IMG/VR virus record: IMGVR_UViG_3300044641_007115
Span: 1 to 64,000 of that record
Length of the DNA: 64,000 nucleotides
Strand: one strand, 5' to 3'
Part shown: one piece after another, positions 34,839-45,190 of the stretch
How the letters are laid out: every line of letters begins with the position of its first letter
How positions within the stretch are numbered: position 1 is the first letter of the stretch
Program-made: the position numbers and the translations under genes
Notes under the pieces: generated by a model
The model's input: the letters and a program-made list of their open reading frames with translations, nothing else
The model's database searches: none
Told to the model about the DNA's origin: nothing

Positions 34839-34915
34839 TGGTAGCGGGAGTGGGAGTTGAACCCACCTAGTACAGCTTATGAGACTGTCGTGCGCACCCG
34901 CTCAGCTTTCCCGCA
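34839..34915 (-). tRNA. tRNA with CAT anticodon (Met/Ile2), atypical
   Basis: ACAGT-CTCATAA-GCTGT anticodon arm, GTGGG-TTCAACT-CCCAC T arm, U1xU72 mismatch, encoded CCA, weak D arm. Confidence 0.75.
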
Positions 34916-34931
34916 TCACTTTTATATAGTA

Positions 34932-35099
34932 TCACAGGTTCTTGATGCCATCGATCAACGCTTGACCGTGCCGGACATCATCAGCACAGGCCGGGCATTC
35001 GAAGTAGTGCTCTTCAAATTCACCCACCAGCGGCTCTGGCAATTCCCTTAACAGGTACCGTTCGACGACTTGGCCGGACACAGCGTCTTCGTGTGACAT
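34932..35099 (-). CDS. Stand-alone zf-HC2 (anti-sigma-type zinc finger) peptide
   Basis: H......VERYLL.EL......EFEEHYFECPACADDV (HxxxCxxC). Confidence 0.7.
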   Translation of the reverse strand: MSHEDAVSGQVVERYLLRELPEPLVGEFEEHYFECPACADDVRHGQALIDGIKNL

Positions 35100-35283
35100 G
35101 TTCATCATTGTACACGAACACTGGAATCCCGACAACCAAAATGATCGCGGCCATCAAGCCGATCAACCATGATTGATACATGGTCATGACGATCATGAGC
35201 ACCGTCCACAGTGCATAGATGACCCTCTGGTGCGCCGGGCGCGTTCGGGCGATGTGAACATAGGCGGCGCGAATCGAATTCAT
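35020..35283 (-). CDS. Small membrane protein
   Basis: MNSIRAA... with two hydrophobic helices. Confidence 0.4.
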   Translation of the reverse strand: MNSIRAAYVHIARTRPAHQRVIYALWTVLMIVMTMYQSWLIGLMAAIILVVGIPVFVYNDEHVTRRRCVRPSRRTVPVKGIARAAGG

Positions 35284-35303
35284 CTGACAACCTCTATGGG
35301 TGT

Positions 35304-35591
35304 TTATACACGCGGAAGCCAAATTTCTTCCATGATCGACAAGTGCCGGTTCCGTTGTTCTTCCGTCAATGGCGGTTGATTGACCAACTTCATCCGGTAT
35401 TCGTCCATGATCTTCTTCAGATATTCTGCTGCCACTCCCGAATGTGGACGGTGGCCGGTTATCAAAATGCCAGCCGGGAAAGGCTTTACTTCCGGGTGTG
35501 CGGCCAGAAACCTTTTGGTGTAGCTCCCGCATCCCGTTGTGGAAAAAGCGAAAGCCCCGGCAATCACCGCGAACAGGTTACGTCTAGTCAT
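35304..35591 (-). CDS. Putative Tat-type lipoprotein
   Basis: MTRRNLF...FSTTGC twin-Arg motif plus lipobox-like Cys. Confidence 0.5.
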   Translation of the reverse strand: MTRRNLFAVIAGAFAFSTTGCGSYTKRFLAAHPEVKPFPAGILITGHRPHSGVAAEYLKKIMDEYRMKLVNQPPLTEEQRNRHLSIMEEIWLPRV

Positions 35592-35595
35592 AGGA

Positions 35596-35898
35596 CTAGT
35601 TTAGCGGCACCCGAACGAACTTGGTTTCCGTCGCGATGTTCGGCGTCGCCGGGACCAGTGTGTACACCTTGGTCGATCCGTCAGAGTAACGGAACCGCAT
35701 CATTTCCAGACCGACGCAACTGACATTCGGAGTGGGATTGGGAACGGGATCTTTGCAGACTCCCCACTCCACCACCTGTGGAATCTTCGGGGAACGTTGG
35801 TCCGTGCTCAACTGTGTTTGAACCAAAGCGAACACTCCGGTGGCTGAAACCAACACAGAGAAAAAAATCAACGTACAGACGTACAAACGTATCATCAT
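35596..35898 (-). CDS. Secreted hypothetical protein
   Basis: Signal-peptide-like N-terminus; exact start uncertain. Confidence 0.45.
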
Positions 35899-35952
35899 AA
35901 AGGAATCGTAACACGGTTTTGGCATTTTTCGTCCGGTCTACAATACAAGTAC

Positions 35953-36546
35953 ATGCAGAACACTCTAATCCCAATGGTCGTAGAACAGTCTCCGCGCGGT
36001 GAACGCTCCTACGACATCTATTCCCGTCTTCTCAAAGAGCACATCATTTTCCTTGGCACCGCCATCGACGACGACGTTGCCAATCTGGTCGTCGCACAGC
36101 TTCTTTTCCTTGCGGCGGAAGACCCGGACAAGGACATCAGCATGTACATCAATTCGCCGGGCGGATCGATCACGGCGGGCCTTGCTATTCTCGATACGAT
36201 GAATCTGGTCAAGCCCGACATCGTGACCTATTGCGTCGGTCAGGCCGCGTCGATGGGTGCTGTGTTGCTGGCGAACGGTGCCAAAGGGAAACGCTTTGCC
36301 TTGCCGCACGCACGCATCCTGATTCACCAGCCGTTGATGCGCGGACTCAGCGGACAGGCCAGCGACATCGACATTCACGCGAAAGAAATCTTGCGCATGC
36401 GCGAAATTCTCAACGGAATCTTAGCGACCAAGACCGGACAACCGCTCGAAAAGATCAGCGCGGACGTGGATCGCGACTACATCTTGGAAGCGGATGCCGC
36501 TGTCAAGTATGGCCTTGTGGACAAGGTGATCGAGAAACAGCCGTAA
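35953..36546 (+). CDS. clpP: ATP-dependent Clp protease proteolytic subunit
   Basis: [22 protein letters not shown] (Ser), IHQP (His), DRD (Asp): intact triad. Confidence 0.98.
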
Positions 36547-36548
36547 CG

Positions 36549-36583
36549 AAAAAAGCCCCGGTCGTAACCGGGGCTTTCGTTTT
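36549..36583. terminator. Bidirectional terminator
   Basis: aaaaaagccccgg..ccgggctttcgtttt. Confidence 0.75.
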
Positions 36584-37067
36584 ATACATCTGACATTGGA
36601 AGTGGTGACGGTGGAACAAAACTGGTATCGACCTGAAGACCGTAATCGCCCGGTGCGACATCATGAATGGACCCCGTGATTGTTGTAGGATTCGGTAAAA
36701 TCATGAACCCGATTTCGCCGTTCAACTCATAAGTGAAATCAAGAGAAGATGTTCCCGAACCAGACACATAAGAGAGTTCGACGATTGATGAATGCATATC
36801 ATCTTCAATATCCATCGTGATCGTCGGGACGCCCACAACAATGACCGGTTCGCTGTATTGAACCCGAAGCCGGAACGTATCGCCCGTTCTGTAGATACCC
36901 TTGTTATCGACAACGAAAACGTTACGAATGACCGCCGCGCCGGTGCGTCGATCAAGGGAACCGATGGTCACCAGAACTTCACCGGTGTCAGGATTCACCC
37001 ATCCTTTCGGGGTTGCAATCGCCTTCGGTGCCCACGACGGCGGATTCGATAGATTCCACAATGCCAT
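36582..37067 (-). CDS. Late structural protein with Ig-like domain
   Basis: MALW start; Y..GD.....V.YSE.V.V.G.P...SGSGT..L.F.Y; late promoter motif. Confidence 0.55.
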   Translation of the reverse strand: MALWNLSNPPSWAPKAIATPKGWVNPDTGEVLVTIGSLDRRTGAAVIRNVFVVDNKGIYRTGDTFRLRVQYSEPVIVVGVPTITMDIEDDMHSSIVELSYVSGSGTSSLDFTYELNGEIGFMILPNPTTITGSIHDVAPGDYGLQVDTSFVPPSPLPMSDV

Positions 37068-37116
37068 AACCTGTATTTAGGTCATCCCCATCCCGGAGGG
37101 ACGACTAAATCTTGGT

Positions 37117-37764
37117 GTGACTAGATCCCAAGCCGGGCGGCTAGGTGCCGCAATTACAGCCCACCGATTCCGACAGGAAGCCATCAGATCATACTACGAA
37201 TCTCCCAATCGATGTTTGCATTGTGATGAAATCATCCATGTTTCAGAAGGCGCGCGGGTCGCAGAGATTCGAAAAAAGAAGTTTTGTGGGCAATCTTGTT
37301 CAGCAATCTACAACAACACACGACGGAATCGACAGACACCTACATGTCAAGTTTGCGGCACTCACGTCACCAAAGGATCAGAAAAGTTCTGTTCTGTAAC
37401 ATGTCACAAACAACACCGGCATACTGAATACATCCAAAGATGGAAAGCTGGATTGGAAGATGGCGTTAACGGTGGAGGAATGTCGATTAGCCCTACTATT
37501 CGGAAATATCTTTTCGAACAGAGGGGACCGGCTTGCTGGAAATGTGGATGGTCACAAGTGAACCCGGTCACAAATCGGGTTCCTCTTCAAGTAAATCATA
37601 TTGATGGTAACCCACTCAATAACAAAGAAGAGAACCTTGAACTCATCTGCCCGAATTGCCACAGTATTACTCCAAATTTCGGAGCATTGAATATGGGCAA
37701 CGGTCGAGAAGTTCGTCGCGCTCGATATCACCAAAAGAAAGTTGGAGCCGGAAGTGGCACTTGA
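37117..37764 (+). CDS. HNH endonuclease (free-standing, Zn-finger N-terminus)
   Basis: CWKCG...LQVNHIDGNPLNNKEENLELICPNCH; FCS..C repeats. Confidence 0.9.
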   Translation: MTRSQAGRLGAAITAHRFRQEAIRSYYESPNRCLHCDEIIHVSEGARVAEIRKKKFCGQSCSAIYNNTRRNRQTPTCQVCGTHVTKGSEKFCSVTCHKQHRHTEYIQRWKAGLEDGVNGGGMSISPTIRKYLFEQRGPACWKCGWSQVNPVTNRVPLQVNHIDGNPLNNKEENLELICPNCHSITPNFGALNMGNGREVRRARYHQKKVGAGSGT

Positions 37765-37819
37765 AGCCACATCATTCGACCTTACAAGGATCGCGCTCTG
37801 CCTCTTAAGCTATTCCGGC
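37743..37819 (-). tRNA. tRNA-Thr(UGU)
   Basis: GCCGGAA/TTCCGGC acceptor, CT-TGT-AA loop, TTCAAGT, CCA. Confidence 0.9.
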
Positions 37820-37832
37820 GTTGGTTGAATTT

Positions 37833-37908
37833 TGGAGCCGCTGGACGGTTACGATCCGTCGCCTAACCCTTACCAAAGGTTCGGTCTGCCGATTGATCCT
37901 ACAGCGGC
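37833..37908 (-). tRNA. tRNA-Thr(GGU)
   Basis: GCCGCTG/CAGCGGC, TT-GGT-AA loop, atypical T loop ATCGTAA, CCA. Confidence 0.85.
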
Positions 37909-37918
37909 GTATTTTGTT

Positions 37919-37994
37919 TGGAGCCGGTGACGACAAATTGAAGTCGTGACTGTGGGGTACGAATCCACTATTTTGCCACTTAAACTACACCGGC
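37919..37994 (-). tRNA. tRNA-Thr(CGU)
   Basis: GCCGGTG/CACCGGC, TT-CGT-AC loop, 8-nt T loop, CCA. Confidence 0.85.
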
Positions 37995-37997
37995 ATG

Positions 37998-38099
37998 TGG
38001 CGGGGAGAATCGGATTTGAACCAATGATAACCATCACAAAACGGCTGTTGCCAGCAAAAGGCATGCAACGGTGCCTTAACCAAGCTAGGCTATCTCCCC
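37998..38099 (-). tRNA. 102-nt class II tRNA-like gene (G73, Ser-like) with an expanded anticodon arm; identity unresolved
   Basis: GGGGAGA/TCTCCCC acceptor, normal D and T arms, variable stem, CCA; no canonical 7-nt anticodon loop. Confidence 0.65.
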
Positions 38100-38110
38100 A
38101 TCAGGCTTAA

Positions 38111-38160
38111 TGTCTCATATCGTAGACAATAACCGGGGTTACTGTACAAGATATGAGACA
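38111..38160. other. 50-nt intergenic hairpin
   Basis: tgtctcatatc/gatatgagaca perfect 11-bp arms, inner taacc/ggtta. Confidence 0.75.
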
Positions 38161-38167
38161 TCAAACT

Positions 38168-38245
38168 TGGCGGTCCTGACGGGATTCGAACCCGTGATCT
38201 TCACCGTGACAGGGTGACGGGGACGGCCAACTCCCCTACAAGACC
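38168..38245 (-). tRNA. tRNA-Asp(GUC)
   Basis: GGTCTTG/CAGGACC, CT-GTC-AC loop, GGTTCGAATCC, G73-CCA. Confidence 0.92.
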
Positions 38246-38246
38246 G

Positions 38247-38320
38247 TGGCGGGGCATACGGGAATCGAACCCGTGGTACACCATAGACAGTGGTGCCGTT
38301 TGCCACTAACGAAATGCCCC
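38247..38320 (-). tRNA. tRNA-Asp(GUC), second unrelated copy
   Basis: GGGGCAT/ATGCCCC, CT-GTC-TA loop, GGTTCGATTCC, G73-CCA. Confidence 0.88.
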
Positions 38321-38343
38321 AAAACTTGCGGAAGGAATGCACA

Positions 38344-38457
38344 CTGGCCGGTGTCGCTCCGACTAACCGTGGGAAGCATCGACTTTACAGTCGCCCCACA
38401 ACAACCGACTTTGGAGGAAGGTGCTCTTTCTTAAGCTAGAAAGTCGGCACCGGCCAG
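38344..38457 (-). ncRNA. 114-nt structured RNA with a tRNA-Trp-like core
   Basis: 10-bp terminal helix CTGGCCGGTG/CACCGGCCAG; internal TAGCTT..AGAGCA, CT-CCA-AA, GTGGG/CCCAC; CGACT-GTAA-AGTCG hairpin. Confidence 0.55.
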
Positions 38458-38488
38458 CGAAATTTCGGACAAGCAAAGAAAGTACAGA

Positions 38489-38564
38489 TCGACTAAGAAT
38501 TGGACTCGAACCAACTTCTCCGGGCGTGCGGCCCGGCGCTTTAACCATGTTAAGCTACATCTCC
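38489..38564 (-). pseudogene. Degenerate tRNA (loop CC-GCA-CG)
   Basis: Good D, anticodon and T arms, but 3' acceptor strand does not pair and no CCA. Confidence 0.6.
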
Positions 38565-38617
38565 GAATGGTGGGGACAGATAACCAATCTGAGGCGGCTT
38601 GTCCTGAAAACTATTAT

Positions 38618-38842
38618 GACACGAAGCAAAGCCGTTCAAAGCAAGAACCAACTATCAGAAGCATCAAAGTGCCTGTCAAATGTCACCGTACAGGTCTGAC
38701 GGTCACCCGGTTGCCCGGTAGCGAAGCATTCCCCATAACACGGGGAAGACCGAACTAGTAAGCCCGGCCATCTGTTTGTAACCAGATAATCTTCCGACTT
38801 CGGCTTAGAACGGCTCTGCCGGAAGTACTTATACTTCGTATC
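38618..38842 (-). ncRNA. ~225-nt highly structured RNA of unknown class
   Basis: 12-bp closing helix GCAGAGCCGTTC/GAACGGCTTTGC; four inner hairpins including CCGG-GCAA-CCGG and TTCCCC/GGGGAA. Confidence 0.6.
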
Positions 38843-38851
38843 GTGGAATCT

Positions 38852-38931
38852 TGGTGGAACACGTGGGAATTGAACCCACCTGAATATCCTCATTGCGAAT
38901 GAGGCGACCACCCCATGCAGTCCCGTGCCCC
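38852..38931 (-). tRNA. tRNA-Ala(CGC)
   Basis: GGGGCAC/GTGTTCC with G3:U70, TT-CGC-AA loop, CCA. Confidence 0.85.
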
Positions 38932-38961
38932 GTTTTGGTAAACCGAGATTCCTTCCGCAAA

Positions 38962-38981
38962 CTATTCACTTGTCAAAGAAC
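38962..38981 (-). promoter_or_regulatory. rrn-type boxA-like antitermination motif
   Basis: GTTCTTTGACAAGTGAATAG in spacer between tRNA genes. Confidence 0.5.
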
Positions 38982-39024
38982 ACTTGTGATCGTACAACAC
39001 AGAAAACTTGTGATCGTCCGATCT

Positions 39025-39104
39025 TGGTGGAACACGTGGGAATCGAACCCACCTGAATATCTTCGATGCCATCGAAGCGGCCACCCCATGCAGCCCCGTG
39101 CCCC
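39025..39104 (-). tRNA. tRNA-Ala(GGC)
   Basis: Near-identical to Ala(CGC) except anticodon arm; G3:U70; CCA. Confidence 0.85.
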
Positions 39105-39113
39105 ATTTGAATT

Positions 39114-39190
39114 TGGTGGACCGTGCCGGGATCGAACCGGCTACCTTCCGCTTGCAAGGCGGATGCTCTCCCAAAATGAGCTAACGGCCC
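39114..39190 (-). tRNA. tRNA-Ala(UGC)
   Basis: GGGCCGT/ACGGTCC G3:U70, CT-TGC-AA loop, canonical arms, CCA. Confidence 0.95.
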
Positions 39191-39239
39191 AAATGGACAA
39201 AACCTAAAATGACTTGAGGGGAGAAAGTCTGTGGGCGGC

Positions 39240-39362
39240 TTAAGCCGCTGCTGCCGTAGCAGCGATGGTATCGATCACAATATCGATGCCACCGGCAAAC
39301 GCAGTCGCGCGCACAGACATCGTAGTGGCTGTGTGCGTTCGAGTTGTGAAGGTTGCCTTCAT
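39240..39362 (-). CDS. 40-aa Ala/Thr-rich leader peptide upstream of the tRNA operon (not in ORF track)
   Basis: MKATFTTRTHTATTMSVRATAFAGGIDIVIDTIAATAAAA*; GAGG 10 nt before ATG; hairpin GCGGC-TTAA-GCCGC over the stop. Confidence 0.55.
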   Translation of the reverse strand: MKATFTTRTHTATTMSVRATAFAGGIDIVIDTIAATAAAA

Positions 39363-39381
39363 TGGTGCGTTGCCTCATCTC

Positions 39382-39411
39382 TATTTATACATACCGCCGG
39401 GCGGATGTCAA
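39382..39411 (-). promoter_or_regulatory. tRNA operon promoter: TTGACA -35 with TATAAA -10 overlapping a T4 late TATAAATA
   Basis: ttgacatccgcccggcggtatgtataaata on the - strand. Confidence 0.7.
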
Positions 39412-39731
39412 CATTTTTCGAAAGAAAAATCGGAAATTTTCAATCCCCACCGGATCGGGAACTCTTGATGCATCATGTCTCTCAGGTTGTTCCCAAAAAC
39501 TTCCTTGGTGGCTTTCCGCGCGGTTTCGATGTCCGCGCCTTGTGCAACATGCATGTCGCGCATCTTGACGGACCAGAAATCCAATGTGCGCTGAATGATT
39601 CCGATAGCCTGTTCCCGGCTGGTGCAAAGGGATTCTTCTTCTTGCTCCCACGACATCGATTCACCGGTCACGGCATCCGTGTGGAACCATTTTTGGGATG
39701 CAACAACTTGCGCGGCGTCTCTGATAGTCAT
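39408..39731 (-). CDS. Hypothetical protein
   Basis: Protein-like ORF after the SprT gene. Confidence 0.5.
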   Translation of the reverse strand: MTIRDAAQVVASQKWFHTDAVTGESMSWEQEEESLCTSREQAIGIIQRTLDFWSVKMRDMHVAQGADIETARKATKEVFGNNLRDMMHQEFPIRWGLKISDFSFEKC

Positions 39732-39743
39732 GCGACCATGCTA

Positions 39744-40649
39744 TCACGATCCGATGACTTTGGAATTCCACTTTCCGAAATCCCGGCCACCGATAGTCGG
39801 AGCGGGTTTGTTCGGGTTGAAGAAGTCGTCCTTGGCCTTCTGATCGACGGCTCTTTCATCGGTCGTGTTCATCGTCCACAACTGAACAGCACTCTTCCGA
39901 TCCGTCAACAGCATGTCTTTCGTCTTGTCACTTACGCCGTAACGGGTCGCCGGTAATGTCCGGCTGAGTGTAATCCGGGTTGCCAGTTTCGATACCGGGA
40001 CGAAAAACGCGGTGATCTCCATGTCGTACTTGATCCAAAGATGACGCAAGGTCGCTTTGAGTTCATTGGCCTTGGCTTTCCATGTCGGCATCAGAACAGA
40101 GTATTGCATGTCGCTCCGGTTGGTATCGATATAGGTCACCAATACACATGGCTTGCCGGTCACATGTTGCATTTCTTCCGGGCTAATCGTGTCCGACACC
40201 GGCACCGGACGACCGAACTCTTTGGATACAGAATGTACTTTCGTCAAGAAGCGTGATCCGTGGTTCTCGAACCAATACCCCTGTGTGATGAGGTACGCAT
40301 GGACCATTTCATGCAGAAGAATGCCGTCCCACTTCCATTCCGGTCGCACCGGCACAGCCGTGCTCATGGTGATCTTCAGGTCATAGACTTCGCCGTTCAT
40401 CTTCGTGTACGCGGCCAGCGAACCAGACGGTTTTCGTTCGCCCGGTGCTAGTTTGAATTTGCCAGTCGTTGTACCAGATACCGCCTTGCCAGTCTTTCCC
40501 CACACCACCGGCATATTGTTCGGGATCGCGCTATCGAAGAACAGCTTGTTGAACAATTGGAACTTCTTCACCAACGGATAGTCTTTGAATGGCAAGACTT
40601 CATCGCTAGTGTGTCCTTCCCGGATGAAATGTCGATATGTCTTGAACAC
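39744..40649 (-). CDS. SprT-like zinc metalloprotease with capsid-targeting-like N-terminus
   Basis: ILLHEMVHAY...HG..F; LFN..FF...P; start MFKTYRHFIRE. Confidence 0.8.
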   Translation of the reverse strand: MFKTYRHFIREGHTSDEVLPFKDYPLVKKFQLFNKLFFDSAIPNNMPVVWGKTGKAVSGTTTGKFKLAPGERKPSGSLAAYTKMNGEVYDLKITMSTAVPVRPEWKWDGILLHEMVHAYLITQGYWFENHGSRFLTKVHSVSKEFGRPVPVSDTISPEEMQHVTGKPCVLVTYIDTNRSDMQYSVLMPTWKAKANELKATLRHLWIKYDMEITAFFVPVSKLATRITLSRTLPATRYGVSDKTKDMLLTDRKSAVQLWTMNTTDERAVDQKAKDDFFNPNKPAPTIGGRDFGKWNSKVIGS

Positions 40650-40725
40650 TCAGATATTTAGGATGACACAGAAAATTTGAGTGCAATCGGTTTCCATCGG
40701 TTTCATCGGGTTCTAAATACATGTC

Positions 40726-41124
40726 ATGCCAGCAGGAAAAACCAATTCGTATAGCGATTCCGTCCTCAATCTTCTACGCGGATCAAATGTCACCGCGTTT
40801 TCTCCCTACGTGGGACTGATGTCGGTCGCTCCAACCGACGACAATTCGACAGGAACCGAACTGAGTGGAAGCGGCTACAGTCGGCAAAGTATCACTTTCG
40901 GCGCTCCTGCCGATGAAGGAACCGGCGGACGCAAAGTCTCAAACACGAACGTGATTCGTTTTGGCCCGGCTTCTGCCAATTGGAGTGCAGCGGTTGCTTT
41001 CGGCATCTATGATGCGGCGTCCAGCGGCAATCTTCGATATTGGGGAACCATGACTACTGTCACCGTGGTGTCGAGTTCATCCCTTGAAATCGCTATTGGA
41101 GACTTGTCAGTCGTCGAAGACTAA
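40726..41124 (+). CDS. Small virion structural protein (paralog of 6906/7305)
   Basis: PYVGL....PTD...GTELSG.GY.RQ...F...GIYDAA..GNL. Confidence 0.7.
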   Translation: MPAGKTNSYSDSVLNLLRGSNVTAFSPYVGLMSVAPTDDNSTGTELSGSGYSRQSITFGAPADEGTGGRKVSNTNVIRFGPASANWSAAVAFGIYDAASSGNLRYWGTMTTVTVVSSSSLEIAIGDLSVVED

Positions 41125-41145
41125 CGAAGCAAGGAGCGCAAAAGA

Positions 41146-41556
41146 ATGAGTAAAGCAAATACCTTAGAGAATGATGTACTCCGAAAAGTTTTCAACAATG
41201 TCGAACCCGCGTGGGATGGGGTCGGAAACCTTTTCGTGAGTTTGCATACCGGCGATCCCGGCGATGCTGGCAATCAAACGACGAATGAAGCCAACTACAC
41301 CAGTTATGCGCGGGTGTCAGTTGCAAGAGACAATACCGGTTGGACTGTTGTCGGTGACACATCCAGCAACACAGCAGCTATCAATTTCCCCCAATGCACT
41401 GGTGGATCAAACACCATTACGCATGTTGGTGTTGGAACGGCAAATTCTGGCGCGGGCACTCTTCTTTACAAGGGAGCACTAAATGCTAGCTTGGCGGTTT
41501 CGAATCTTATCACGCCAAGTTTTCCGATCAGTGCTTTGCAAATCATCGAGGACTAA
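41146..41556 (+). CDS. Small virion structural protein (paralog)
   Basis: LEND.L; LHT.DPGDAG.Q.TNE..Y..YARV; FPQCTGG..TITH.G.G. Confidence 0.7.
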   Translation: MSKANTLENDVLRKVFNNVEPAWDGVGNLFVSLHTGDPGDAGNQTTNEANYTSYARVSVARDNTGWTVVGDTSSNTAAINFPQCTGGSNTITHVGVGTANSGAGTLLYKGALNASLAVSNLITPSFPISALQIIED

Positions 41557-44890: not shown

Positions 44891-45190
44891 TTCTTGCGAA
44901 GGTCTTTCTTTAACAAGGCACCCTCAGTTCCCCGGATGGGTGCAATTAAGCAGCCATCGCCAGAACATTGCTGTTGGCAGTTATTGTTTTACGCTGTTAC
45001 CCGAATCCGCTCATAAAACTTCATCGGTTTCGGTAGTCGTCTACCGGTCCACTCCACTTTCCCAACTCACTGCCAATCGAATTCCGGGACGCCCCCGTAT
45101 GGTGCCCCCTTTCGAGAGCGTGTTTTGGTGGAGGCGGCGGGAGTCGAACCCGCGTCTTGCCAGCGTCAGAATCGGATCATCGCGGACAAC
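44890..45190 (-). ncRNA. ssrA: Circularly permuted two-piece tmRNA (acceptor piece ~45188-45126, 29-nt intervening segment, coding piece from 45096); tag ANSNVLAMAA at 44978-44946
   Basis: GCGGGTTCGACTCCCGC-CGCCTCC-ACCA precedes GGGGGCG; 7-bp acceptor with G3:U70; helix 2 pairs across pieces; ATAACT-GCC resume context. Confidence 0.92.

What the first reader, a model, noticed from the sequence alone, without database searches (positions are those of the whole stretch)
39744..40661. SprT metalloprotease carrying a T4-like capsid-targeting sequence
Seen: N-terminus MFKTYRHFIRE-G, an HEMVH zincin motif and a late promoter motif. Established: T4 internal proteins use MKTYQEFIAE, are cleaved after E by gp21 and are injected with the DNA; SprT/Wss1 proteases remove DNA-protein crosslinks. 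Inference: an injected protease that strips or cleaves host defence proteins from incoming DNA.
Basis: partly seen in the sequence, partly recalled or inferred. Interest (0 to 1): 0.6.

Follow-up and report, generated by a model that had tools for sequence, protein, structure and literature searches.

The report
Capsid-targeted Spartan-like protease, T4-like phage
A lake-water T4-like phage encodes a Spartan/SprT-type zinc protease whose first 11 residues look like the tag T4 uses to load proteins into its capsid for injection, so the phage probably delivers a DNA-associated protease into the host with its genome; what the protease cuts is unknown.

Summary
Window 39744-40649 (-) is a 301-aa gene with a GTG start. 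It begins MFKTYRHFIRE|G and carries HEMVH plus a third zinc histidine. A CTAAATA late-promoter-type motif lies 5 nt upstream of the start.

The genome is a 224-kb, about 96% complete T4-like phage with a gp21-type prohead protease and a gp23-type capsid protein. The leader is not a chance resemblance. At least 11 other proteins in the genome start with the same M-x-x-F-x-x-F-L-x-E leader, nearly all behind a TAAATA motif. Eleven of the 12 are basic once the leader is removed.

The protein belongs to a mostly viral two-domain family (298 cluster representatives). Many members carry such leaders, and each leader matches the leader style of neighbouring genes in its own phage. The N-terminal domain folds like the human Spartan protease domain (Z 14.8). 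The C-terminal domain has no known fold.

Best reading: a late, capsid-targeted protease that the prohead protease trims after E11 and that is injected with the DNA. The proposed target, host defence or other DNA-bound proteins, is inference only. This is a new variant of known kinds (T4 capsid-targeted cargo; phage SprT-like peptidases). I found no paper linking the two.

The parts
40655..40661 (-). CTAAATA late-promoter-type motif, 5 nt upstream of the GTG. By the Aeh1 rule (motif begins at -12) transcription would start at or next to the start codon, giving a leaderless or near-leaderless mRNA.
   Evidence: In relatives L006 and L007 only ATAAATA, the 5-nt spacer and the GTG are conserved upstream. 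CTAAATA at -12 is the predicted late promoter of T4-like phage Aeh1 (PMC1524935).
40617..40649 (-). 11-codon N-terminal leader MFKTYRHFIRE, a capsid-targeting-sequence-like propeptide. Cleavage is predicted after E11 at an I-R-E site.
   Evidence: It is conserved in homologues at 87% and 72% identity. T4 CTS rules come from PMC9026906. In the AF2 model aa 1-12 form a low-confidence helix outside the fold.
40179..40598 (-). SprT/Spartan-like zinc metalloprotease domain (aa ~18-157).
   Evidence: Pfam PF10263. PDB profile hit to Spartan. Fold match to 6mdx_A: Z 14.8, rmsd 2.4 A over 122 residues, 25% identity. Foldseek E=3.6e-5.
40299..40313 (-). HEMVH zinc-binding and catalytic motif (H113, E114, H117).
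   Evidence: Invariant in the 68-sequence family alignment A2.
40260..40262 (-). H130, the third zinc ligand (ENHG..F).
   Evidence: Invariant in A2. It aligns with the Spartan HG motif.
39822..40178 (-). Family-specific C-terminal alpha/beta domain (aa 158-276) of unknown fold, with one nearly invariant Arg (R230). It sits where Spartan has its zinc-binding DNA sub-domain.
   Evidence: pLDDT is 93-98 in the full-length model. Best PDB matches are Z 5.0 or less. Conservation.
39744..39821 (-). Basic, disordered C-terminal tail (aa 277-301) and the stop codon.
   Evidence: pLDDT falls to 40-65. pI 10.3.
39408..39731 (-). 107-aa ORF 12 nt downstream, probably co-transcribed. It is conserved only in the closest relatives, has no leader, and its function is unknown.
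   Evidence: tblastn gives 69-75% identity at the same position in L006-L008. No counterpart is found in wider relatives.
40713..40719 (+). Second CTAAATA, facing the other way, 6 nt before the ATG of the divergent gene 40726-41124 (matches the phrog_240 head-protein family).

Best explanation
The gene encodes a late-expressed precursor of a Spartan/SprT-type zinc metalloprotease. It has an 11-residue N-terminal capsid-targeting leader, a protease domain, and a family-specific C-terminal domain.

Proposed course of events (inferred):
- The leader binds the scaffolding core of the prohead.
- The phage's gp21-type prohead protease cuts after E11 (I-R-E|G), releasing a basic 32.8-kDa enzyme inside the head.
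- The enzyme is packed with the DNA and enters the host with it.
- There it most likely cleaves proteins that sit on or attack the incoming DNA, either defence nucleases or nucleoid and silencing proteins.

Shown here by computation: the gene, the leader and its statistics, the gp21 and gp23 homologues, the late-promoter motif, the conserved catalytic site, the Spartan-like fold, the leader-bearing viral family, and the match between each homologue's leader and the leader style of its own phage.

Inferred only: packaging, cleavage, injection, DNA dependence and the substrate.
For: 1. T4-like setting. Peptidase_S77 (gp21) scores E=7e-38 and Gp23 scores E=9e-143 in the same 224-kb genome.

2. 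The leader matches the T4 CTS at the positions that matter. T4 residues 4 and 7 serve targeting and residues 8 and 10 serve processing (PMC9026906). Here they correspond to Y, F, I and E, shifted by one residue. The gp21 cleavage motif is L/I-X-E.

3. At least 12 proteins in the genome carry the leader directly at their start. Eight have a TAAATA motif (one a TAAAA variant) 6-15 nt upstream, and two more directly follow such a gene. Eleven of 12 are basic after leader removal, against 39% of all genes (p=2.4e-4). The prohead protease ORF itself ends with FSRFLSE plus 5 residues.

4. The leader, the GTG start and the promoter motif are conserved in relatives whose upstream DNA is otherwise unrelated. 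Codon differences are 79 synonymous against 39 non-synonymous.

5. Family. 298 cluster representatives have E<1e-3. Most are 230-290 aa with both domains. By regular expressions, about 27 of 150 begin with a CTS-like leader and 28 with an MR..EL.E-type leader.

6. In IMG/VR contigs the homologue's leader follows the style of neighbouring genes: MR.HEL.E arrays, MKF..YL.E arrays, MKSFK.F.AE arrays. A permutation test gives p about 0.003. A gp21 homologue was found in 3 of the 5 such fragments tested.

7. H113, E114, H117 and H130 are invariant across the family. The fold matches Spartan at Z 14.8.

8. The family is rare in cellular genomes. A scan of 185,579 species gave 14 weak matches to the protease domain alone.
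Against: - There are no proteomic, transcriptomic or biochemical data. The phage is uncultured and no RNA runs hold the sequence.
- The leader is 11 residues, not 10, and the start codon is GTG. On a leaderless mRNA that may translate poorly.
- Leader-tagged proteins include enzymes not obviously suited to injection, such as a CCA-adding enzyme and a ferritin-like protein. The leader could therefore have another shared role.
- Many family members show no recognisable leader, although their start calls are uncertain.
- Spartan's DNA-binding zinc sub-domain is absent, and the replacing domain has no known fold, so DNA dependence is unsupported.
- Nothing identifies the substrate.
Confidence: 0.7

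Rival explanations
1. The protein is capsid-targeted but works inside the head or during assembly rather than after injection. It could be an accessory maturation protease that helps clear scaffold or internal proteins, or one that trims other cargo.
For: It shares the leader and late timing with assembly proteins. The ORF in the gp22 position also starts with a leader-like sequence. An accessory zincin peptidase has been proposed for maturation in other jumbo phages (PMC7824862).
Against: The family is patchy and varies in copy number, with tandem copies in L025 and only fragments in PTm1. It sits in arrays of variable leader-tagged genes rather than in the conserved head module. T4-type maturation needs only gp21 (PMC9026906). 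Iyer et al. read the same patchiness as pointing to host targets.
Confidence: 0.12
2. The leader is not a packaging signal. It is a shared N-terminal module with another role, such as translation initiation on leaderless late mRNAs or a degradation or localisation tag. The protease would act in the cytoplasm late in infection, for example removing DNA-protein crosslinks or covalent protein adducts from replicating or packaging DNA.
For: The leader co-occurs with the TAAATA-plus-short-spacer arrangement. Some tagged proteins are housekeeping-type enzymes. Spartan and Wss1 are DNA-protein crosslink repair proteases (title of PDB 6mdx).
Against: Most genes with the TAAATA short-spacer arrangement do not have the leader, so the leader is not required for that expression mode. 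The leader ends in the gp21 cleavage motif, and the protease ORF carries the same motif at its own C-terminus. The tagged set is strongly enriched for basic proteins, like T4 internal proteins. Leader styles differ between phages but agree within each phage, as expected if they co-evolve with each phage's own core and protease.
Confidence: 0.12
3. The resemblance to the T4 CTS is coincidental and the ORF is an ordinary phage SprT-like gene.
For: The motif is short. KVP40, nt-1 and Aeh1 have SprT-like genes without any such leader.
Against: The position-specific excess at ORF starts is 9-11 observed against about 0.5 expected. The leader is conserved in homologues. Leader styles agree within genomes.
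Confidence: 0.03

Closest known systems
T4 internal proteins IPI, IPII and IPIII, and their capsid targeting sequence (MKTYQEFIAE)
   Same: An N-terminal leader of 10-11 residues with aromatic residues at the targeting positions and an I/L-x-E cleavage site. It is encoded in a T4-like genome that has a gp21-type protease. The mature protein is basic. The gene has a late-type promoter. The leader is shared by otherwise unrelated proteins (PMC9026906; PMC3012670).
   Different: The cargo is a 290-aa enzyme with a zincin active site rather than a small DNA-associated or inhibitor protein. The leader has one extra residue. Packaging and cleavage are untested.
T4 Alt (packaged ADP-ribosyltransferase processed by gp21)
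   Same: An enzyme carried in the head, trimmed by gp21 and delivered with the DNA to act on host proteins at the first moment of infection (PMC9026906).
   Different: The chemistry differs (ADP-ribosylation against proteolysis). There is no sequence relationship.
Human Spartan (SPRTN) SprT domain and yeast Wss1
   Same: The metalloprotease fold, with HExxH plus a downstream His in an (E)xHG..F motif. Z 14.8 to 6mdx_A and 6.2-6.7 to Wss1.
   Different: There is no zinc-binding DNA sub-domain and none of the SHP, PIP or UBZ modules. A different C-terminal domain is present. DNA-dependent activity has not been shown.
ArdC of plasmid R388 (ssDNA-binding antirestriction protein with a metalloprotease domain)
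   Same: A zincin protease domain linked to newly entering foreign DNA and to escape from restriction (PMC7213743). There is weak fold similarity, Z 5.1 to 6sna_A.
   Different: ArdC is expressed in the recipient cell rather than carried in a capsid. Its N-terminal ssDNA-binding domain is absent here. The structural relationship is distant.
SprT-like metallopeptidases noted in gp23-type ('group 2.2') jumbo phages; Tenacibaculum phage pT24 BPT24_155 and PTm1 ORF-065
   Same: The same protein family. pT24 is the top viral fold hit at E=2.7e-10, and tblastn gives about 30% identity. Iyer et al. proposed that these peptidases cleave host proteins (PMC7824862). The pT24 protein and PTm1's neighbouring gene ORF-066 also start with leader-like peptides ending in E.
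   Different: No link to capsid targeting was made in that paper or in the other papers I found. The SprT-like genes of KVP40, nt-1 and Aeh1 belong to another subfamily and lack a leader.

Membership tests
SprT-like zincin family (Pfam PF10263; Spartan/Wss1 type) | Profile match above the curated threshold | tested here: met
   28.7 bits against a 25.6-bit cut-off, aa 29-145. The genome-level search gives E=5.4e-8.
SprT-like zincin family (Pfam PF10263; Spartan/Wss1 type) | HExxH plus a third zinc ligand (His of the HG motif) about 13 residues downstream | tested here: met
   H113, E114, H117 and H130 are invariant in 68 family members and align with Spartan.
SprT-like zincin family (Pfam PF10263; Spartan/Wss1 type) | Spartan-like metalloprotease fold | tested here: met
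   AF2 model with pLDDT 90.9. 6mdx_A at Z 14.8, rmsd 2.4 A over 122 aligned residues.
Spartan proper (DNA-dependent crosslink-repair protease) | Zinc-binding ssDNA sub-domain following the protease sub-domain | tested here: not met
   The alignment to Spartan stops at model residue 156. The C-terminal domain has no cysteine/histidine cluster and no fold match.
Spartan proper (DNA-dependent crosslink-repair protease) | Protease activity switched on by DNA | not testable with these tools
   This needs a biochemical assay. The only hint is that the mature protein is basic, pI 9.5.
T4-type capsid-targeting-sequence (CTS) cargo | Leader of about 10-19 residues at the extreme N-terminus, with key aromatic/hydrophobic positions and an L/I-x-E cleavage site | tested here: met
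   The 11-residue leader places Y, F, I and E at T4 positions 4, 7, 8 and 10, shifted by one (rules from PMC9026906).
T4-type capsid-targeting-sequence (CTS) cargo | A gp21-type (Peptidase_S77) prohead protease and gp23-type capsid in the same genome | tested here: met
T4-type capsid-targeting-sequence (CTS) cargo | The same leader shared by several unrelated proteins of the phage | tested here: met
   At least 12 proteins carry it. In 9 the first ATG lies exactly 3 codons upstream of the motif, against about 0.5 expected.
T4-type capsid-targeting-sequence (CTS) cargo | Late expression | tested here: inconclusive
   A CTAAATA motif of the kind that precedes the capsid gene is present and conserved. 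No transcript data exist.
T4-type capsid-targeting-sequence (CTS) cargo | Physical presence in virions with the leader removed, and injection into the host | not testable with these tools
   The phage is an uncultured lake-water virus. No proteomics was found.

The most novel reading that the evidence does not exclude
A large, so far unrecognised family of Spartan-like proteases is loaded into the capsids of uncultured T4-like phages through phage-specific capsid-targeting leaders and injected with the genome. It acts as a first-strike weapon that proteolyses DNA-bound host defence or silencing proteins. The leader styles would also allow the whole injected proteome of such phages to be read from sequence alone. 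In this phage that set includes a CCA-adding enzyme and a ferritin/Dps-like protein.
Probability: 0.35. Interest if true: 0.8.

Novelty: new variant of a known kind. Interest (0 to 1): 0.65.

Why it matters
Proteins that T4 injects with its DNA include direct counter-defence and host-modifying proteins: IPI* blocks a restriction enzyme and Alt modifies host proteins. Outside a few laboratory phages this cargo is almost unknown.

This locus gives a sequence-only way to recognise such cargo in uncultured T4-like phages. The signature is a phage-specific N-terminal leader ending in the prohead-protease cleavage site, placed behind a late promoter. The locus also identifies a recurrent cargo of an unexpected kind, a Spartan-like protease.

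If the enzyme cleaves DNA-bound host proteins on entry, that would be a proteolytic counter-defence delivered ahead of any phage gene expression. It would parallel the protease domain of the plasmid antirestriction protein ArdC. It would also supply a compact bacterial-virus model for Spartan-type proteases.

Tried and rejected
- PHROGs and NCBIfam gave no hit for the protein.
- C-terminal domain. It was folded alone (pLDDT 77) and searched against the PDB by Foldseek and VIA. Nothing scored above Z 5.0; the top hits, Dmd and AcrIIC3, are at noise level. The ESM Atlas feature search gave only unnamed clusters below 0.9.
- SprT-like genes of KVP40, nt-1 and Aeh1 were checked as possible cultured models. 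They belong to a different subfamily and have no leader. T4 has no SprT-like gene.
- The 107-aa downstream ORF was considered as a partner or inhibitor of the protease. It is conserved only in the nearest relatives, so no complex prediction was run and no binding is claimed.
- Sigma-70 promoter and terminator scans of 39200-41200 found nothing.
- No RNA sequencing run holds the stretch.
- A loose leader regular expression proved too permissive: 35 of 149 family N-termini matched, against 4.4% of internal windows. I therefore rely on the stricter counts and the contig-level comparison.
- Three literature searches found no paper tying SprT-like proteins to virions or a CTS. The library lacks most subscription journals, so this is weak evidence of novelty.

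Full report
**The observation**

Window 39744-40649 on the minus strand is a 301-codon ORF. It starts at a GTG directly preceded by an in-frame TGA, so the start cannot lie further upstream.
- The protein begins MFKTYRHFIRE followed by GHTS.
- HEMVH lies at residues 113-117 and an ENHG..F motif at 128-134.
- CTAAATA lies at 40655-40661 on the coding strand, 5 nt before the GTG.
- Pfam places residues 29-145 in the SprT-like family above the curated threshold.
- T4 ipII and ipIII, translated from the T4 record, begin MKTYQEFIAE then A.

**The setting**

The window is the first 64 kb of a 224,490-bp IMG/VR virus record (52.7% G+C, about 96% complete).
- It encodes a gp21-type prohead protease (Peptidase_S77, E=7e-38) and a gp23-type major capsid protein (E=9e-143).
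- Near-identical DNA recurs in lake-water metagenomes from eight or more studies. No RNA run holds it.
- Among cultured phages, only the jumbo Tenacibaculum phages pT24, PTm1 and PTm5 have a detectable relative of the protein.

**Is the leader more than chance?**

A six-frame scan for [KR]T[YF]xxF[IL]xE found two hits in the whole genome. Both lie directly at ORF starts: this ORF, and a 144-aa ORF at genome position 77855 that begins with an exact 10-residue version.

Relaxing the pattern showed a leader family of the form M-x-x-F-x-x-F-L-x-E on at least 12 proteins. The core motif occurs 31 times in all ORFs of 50 codons or more. In 9 of these the ORF's first ATG lies exactly three codons upstream, where about 0.5 is expected. 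The SprT ORF (offset four, GTG) and two others are further near-start cases.

Three further observations fit a targeting and processing role:
- The prohead protease ORF itself ends with FSRFLSE plus five residues. T4 gp21 is also processed at its C-terminus (PMC9026906).
- After leader removal, 11 of the 12 proteins are basic (pI 8.7-9.9; the SprT protein is 32.8 kDa, pI 9.5). Only 39% of a 303-gene set for the genome is that basic (p=2.4e-4). T4 internal proteins are basic too.
- In T4, CTS residues 4 and 7 serve targeting, residues 8 and 10 serve processing, and gp21 cuts after L/I-X-E (PMC9026906). The corresponding Y, F, I and E are all present here, shifted by one residue.

**The promoter motif**

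TAAATA lies 3-12 nt (mode 5-6) upstream of the first start codon of an ORF of 60 codons or more in 32 of its 55 copies. The reverse-complement control gives 2 of 55.
- The same CTAAATA stands 31-34 nt upstream of the capsid gene and of the gene after the protease, there followed by an AGGAG.
- Eight of the 12 leader genes have TAAATA (one a TAAAA variant) just upstream, and two more directly follow such a gene.
- CTAAATA beginning at -12 is the predicted late promoter of the T4-like phage Aeh1 (PMC1524935). By that rule, transcription of this gene would start at or next to the GTG.
- In relatives L006 and L007 (88% protein identity) the upstream DNA is unrelated except for ATAAATA, a 5-nt spacer and the GTG. 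The coding region differs at 79 synonymous and 39 non-synonymous codons.

The gene, its unusual start and the motif are therefore under selection. Late timing itself remains a prediction.

**The protein**

Word-indexed search found only three close homologues. Those with complete N-termini keep the leader, as MPKTY.HFI[RK]E.

A full profile search of 1.84 billion cluster representatives found 298 relatives at E<1e-3. Most are 230-290 aa and match across both domains. In a 68-member alignment N34, P43, H113, E114, H117, H130 and F134 are invariant, so the zinc site is intact family-wide.

The AlphaFold model is confident (pLDDT 90.9, pTM 0.81). Residues 1-12 form a low-confidence helix outside the fold.
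- N-terminal domain: it superposes on the human Spartan protease sub-domain (6mdx_A; Z 14.8, rmsd 2.4 A, 122 residues, 25% identity). This is well above minigluzincins (8-9), Wss1 (6-7) and ArdC (5.1).
- C-terminal domain (aa 158-276): it occupies the place of Spartan's zinc-binding DNA sub-domain but has no cysteine/histidine cluster. Folded alone, it has no PDB match above noise. Its role is unknown.

**The family carries leaders that follow each phage's own style**

Many representatives begin with CTS-like peptides or with a shorter MR..EL.E type. By regular expressions these are 27 and 28 of 150.

In IMG/VR contigs the homologue's leader resembles the leaders of neighbouring, unrelated ORFs of the same contig:
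- an MR.HEL.E-type homologue sits among four other MR..EL.E genes (L034);
- an MKF..YL.E-type homologue sits in an array of eight or more such genes (L042);
- MKSFK..-type (L040), MKTF..-type (L044) and MKF.DYY-type (L049) homologues behave likewise.

A simple permutation test on first-start N-termini supports this. Mean best identity is 3.67 within loci and 2.90 between loci (p about 0.003).

A gp21 homologue was found in three of the five such fragments tested. The other two are 28-37% complete. PTm1's neighbouring gene ORF-066 and the pT24 homologue also begin with leader-like peptides ending in E.

A pattern-limited scan of one genome for each of 185,579 prokaryote species gave only 14 weak matches, all to the protease domain alone.

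This is the pattern expected of a packaging and processing signal that co-evolves with each phage's core and protease. It also shows that the SprT-family enzyme is a recurrent member of the leader-tagged gene arrays.

**Mechanism**

The best-supported account has these steps:
1. late transcription;
2. synthesis of a precursor;
3. leader-mediated incorporation into the scaffolding core;
4. cleavage after E11 by the prohead protease;
5. retention with the packed DNA;
6. co-injection.

All six steps are inferred from T4 precedent plus the sequence evidence above. I put this at about 0.7.

What the enzyme then does is less certain. By analogy with IPI* and Alt of T4 (PMC3012670; PMC9026906), and with ArdC, an antirestriction protein with a metalloprotease domain (PMC7213743), I favour cleavage of host proteins that bind or attack the entering DNA. 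Iyer et al. had already guessed host targets for SprT-like peptidases of gp23-type jumbo phages, from their patchy and variable distribution (PMC7824862).

The rivals are an intra-capsid or assembly role, a cytoplasmic late role with a leader that is not a packaging signal, and coincidence. They are weighed in their own sections of this report.

**Novelty**

Capsid-targeted cargo and phage SprT-like peptidases are each known. I found nothing joining them, with the caveat that the paper library is incomplete. I class the finding as a new variant of a known kind. Its main value is that it is directly testable and that it opens a way to read injected proteomes from sequence.

Noticed in passing
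window 44946-45187 (-): A phage-encoded permuted (two-piece) tmRNA. Rfam RF04321 scores 98 bits, and ARAGORN gives the tag peptide ANSNVLAMAA. From my own knowledge, permuted tmRNAs are typical of alpha- and some beta-proteobacteria and of cyanobacteria, so this may hint at the host.
   Followed up: partly
whole genome G000; in the window e.g. 2009, 5986, 13245, 29583, 37080 (-), 40661 (-), 40713, 44396: 32 of the 55 TAAATA motifs lie only 3-12 nt before a start codon. Many late genes of this phage would therefore be transcribed as leaderless or nearly leaderless mRNAs. The capsid and scaffold-position genes instead keep a roughly 30-nt leader with AGGAG.
   Followed up: partly
G000 172453-173871 (-), outside the window (L017): A CCA-adding / poly(A) polymerase-type nucleotidyltransferase with RNA-binding and HD domains carries the same capsid-targeting-like leader (Pfam E=4.8e-23). 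It may be a packaged tRNA-repair enzyme.
   Followed up: no
G000 136761-137351 (-), outside the window (L016): A ferritin/Dps-like protein (PF00210, E=2.6e-20) carries the leader. It is the only acidic member of the tagged set, pI 4.1.
   Followed up: no
G000 68369-69163 (+), 69828-71339 (-), 212260-213108 (+) (L010, L011, L019): Further leader-tagged proteins carry DUF2786 (above the curated cut-off in L011, just below it in L010) or two DUF5710 repeats (L019). Six other tagged proteins had no Pfam match or were not scanned.
   Followed up: no
G000 about 214490-215107 (+) (L086): A second, weak SprT-like ORF (HEVAH ... HG; 15 bits, below the cut-off) without a leader lies between two leader-tagged genes.
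   Followed up: no
G000 158334 (+), the end of the Peptidase_S77 ORF (L001): The prohead protease ORF ends with a leader-like FSRFLSE motif followed by five residues. This suggests C-terminal self-processing or core targeting, as discussed for T4 gp21 (PMC9026906).
   Followed up: no
window 34839-39190 (-): A cluster of 10 tRNA genes (Met, 3 Thr, 2 Asp, Cys, 3 Ala) ends 218 nt from the end of the 107-aa ORF that follows the SprT gene. Rfam adds one more tRNA-like match at 38001-38099. In T4, ipII and ipIII also lie a few kb from the tRNA cluster, which may be coincidence.
   Followed up: no
L025 8931-9746 and the next ORF from 9739: One related contig carries two SprT-family genes in tandem. 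Other relatives are fused to much larger proteins (a 1252-aa ORF in L059; P0030 is 1371 aa).
   Followed up: no
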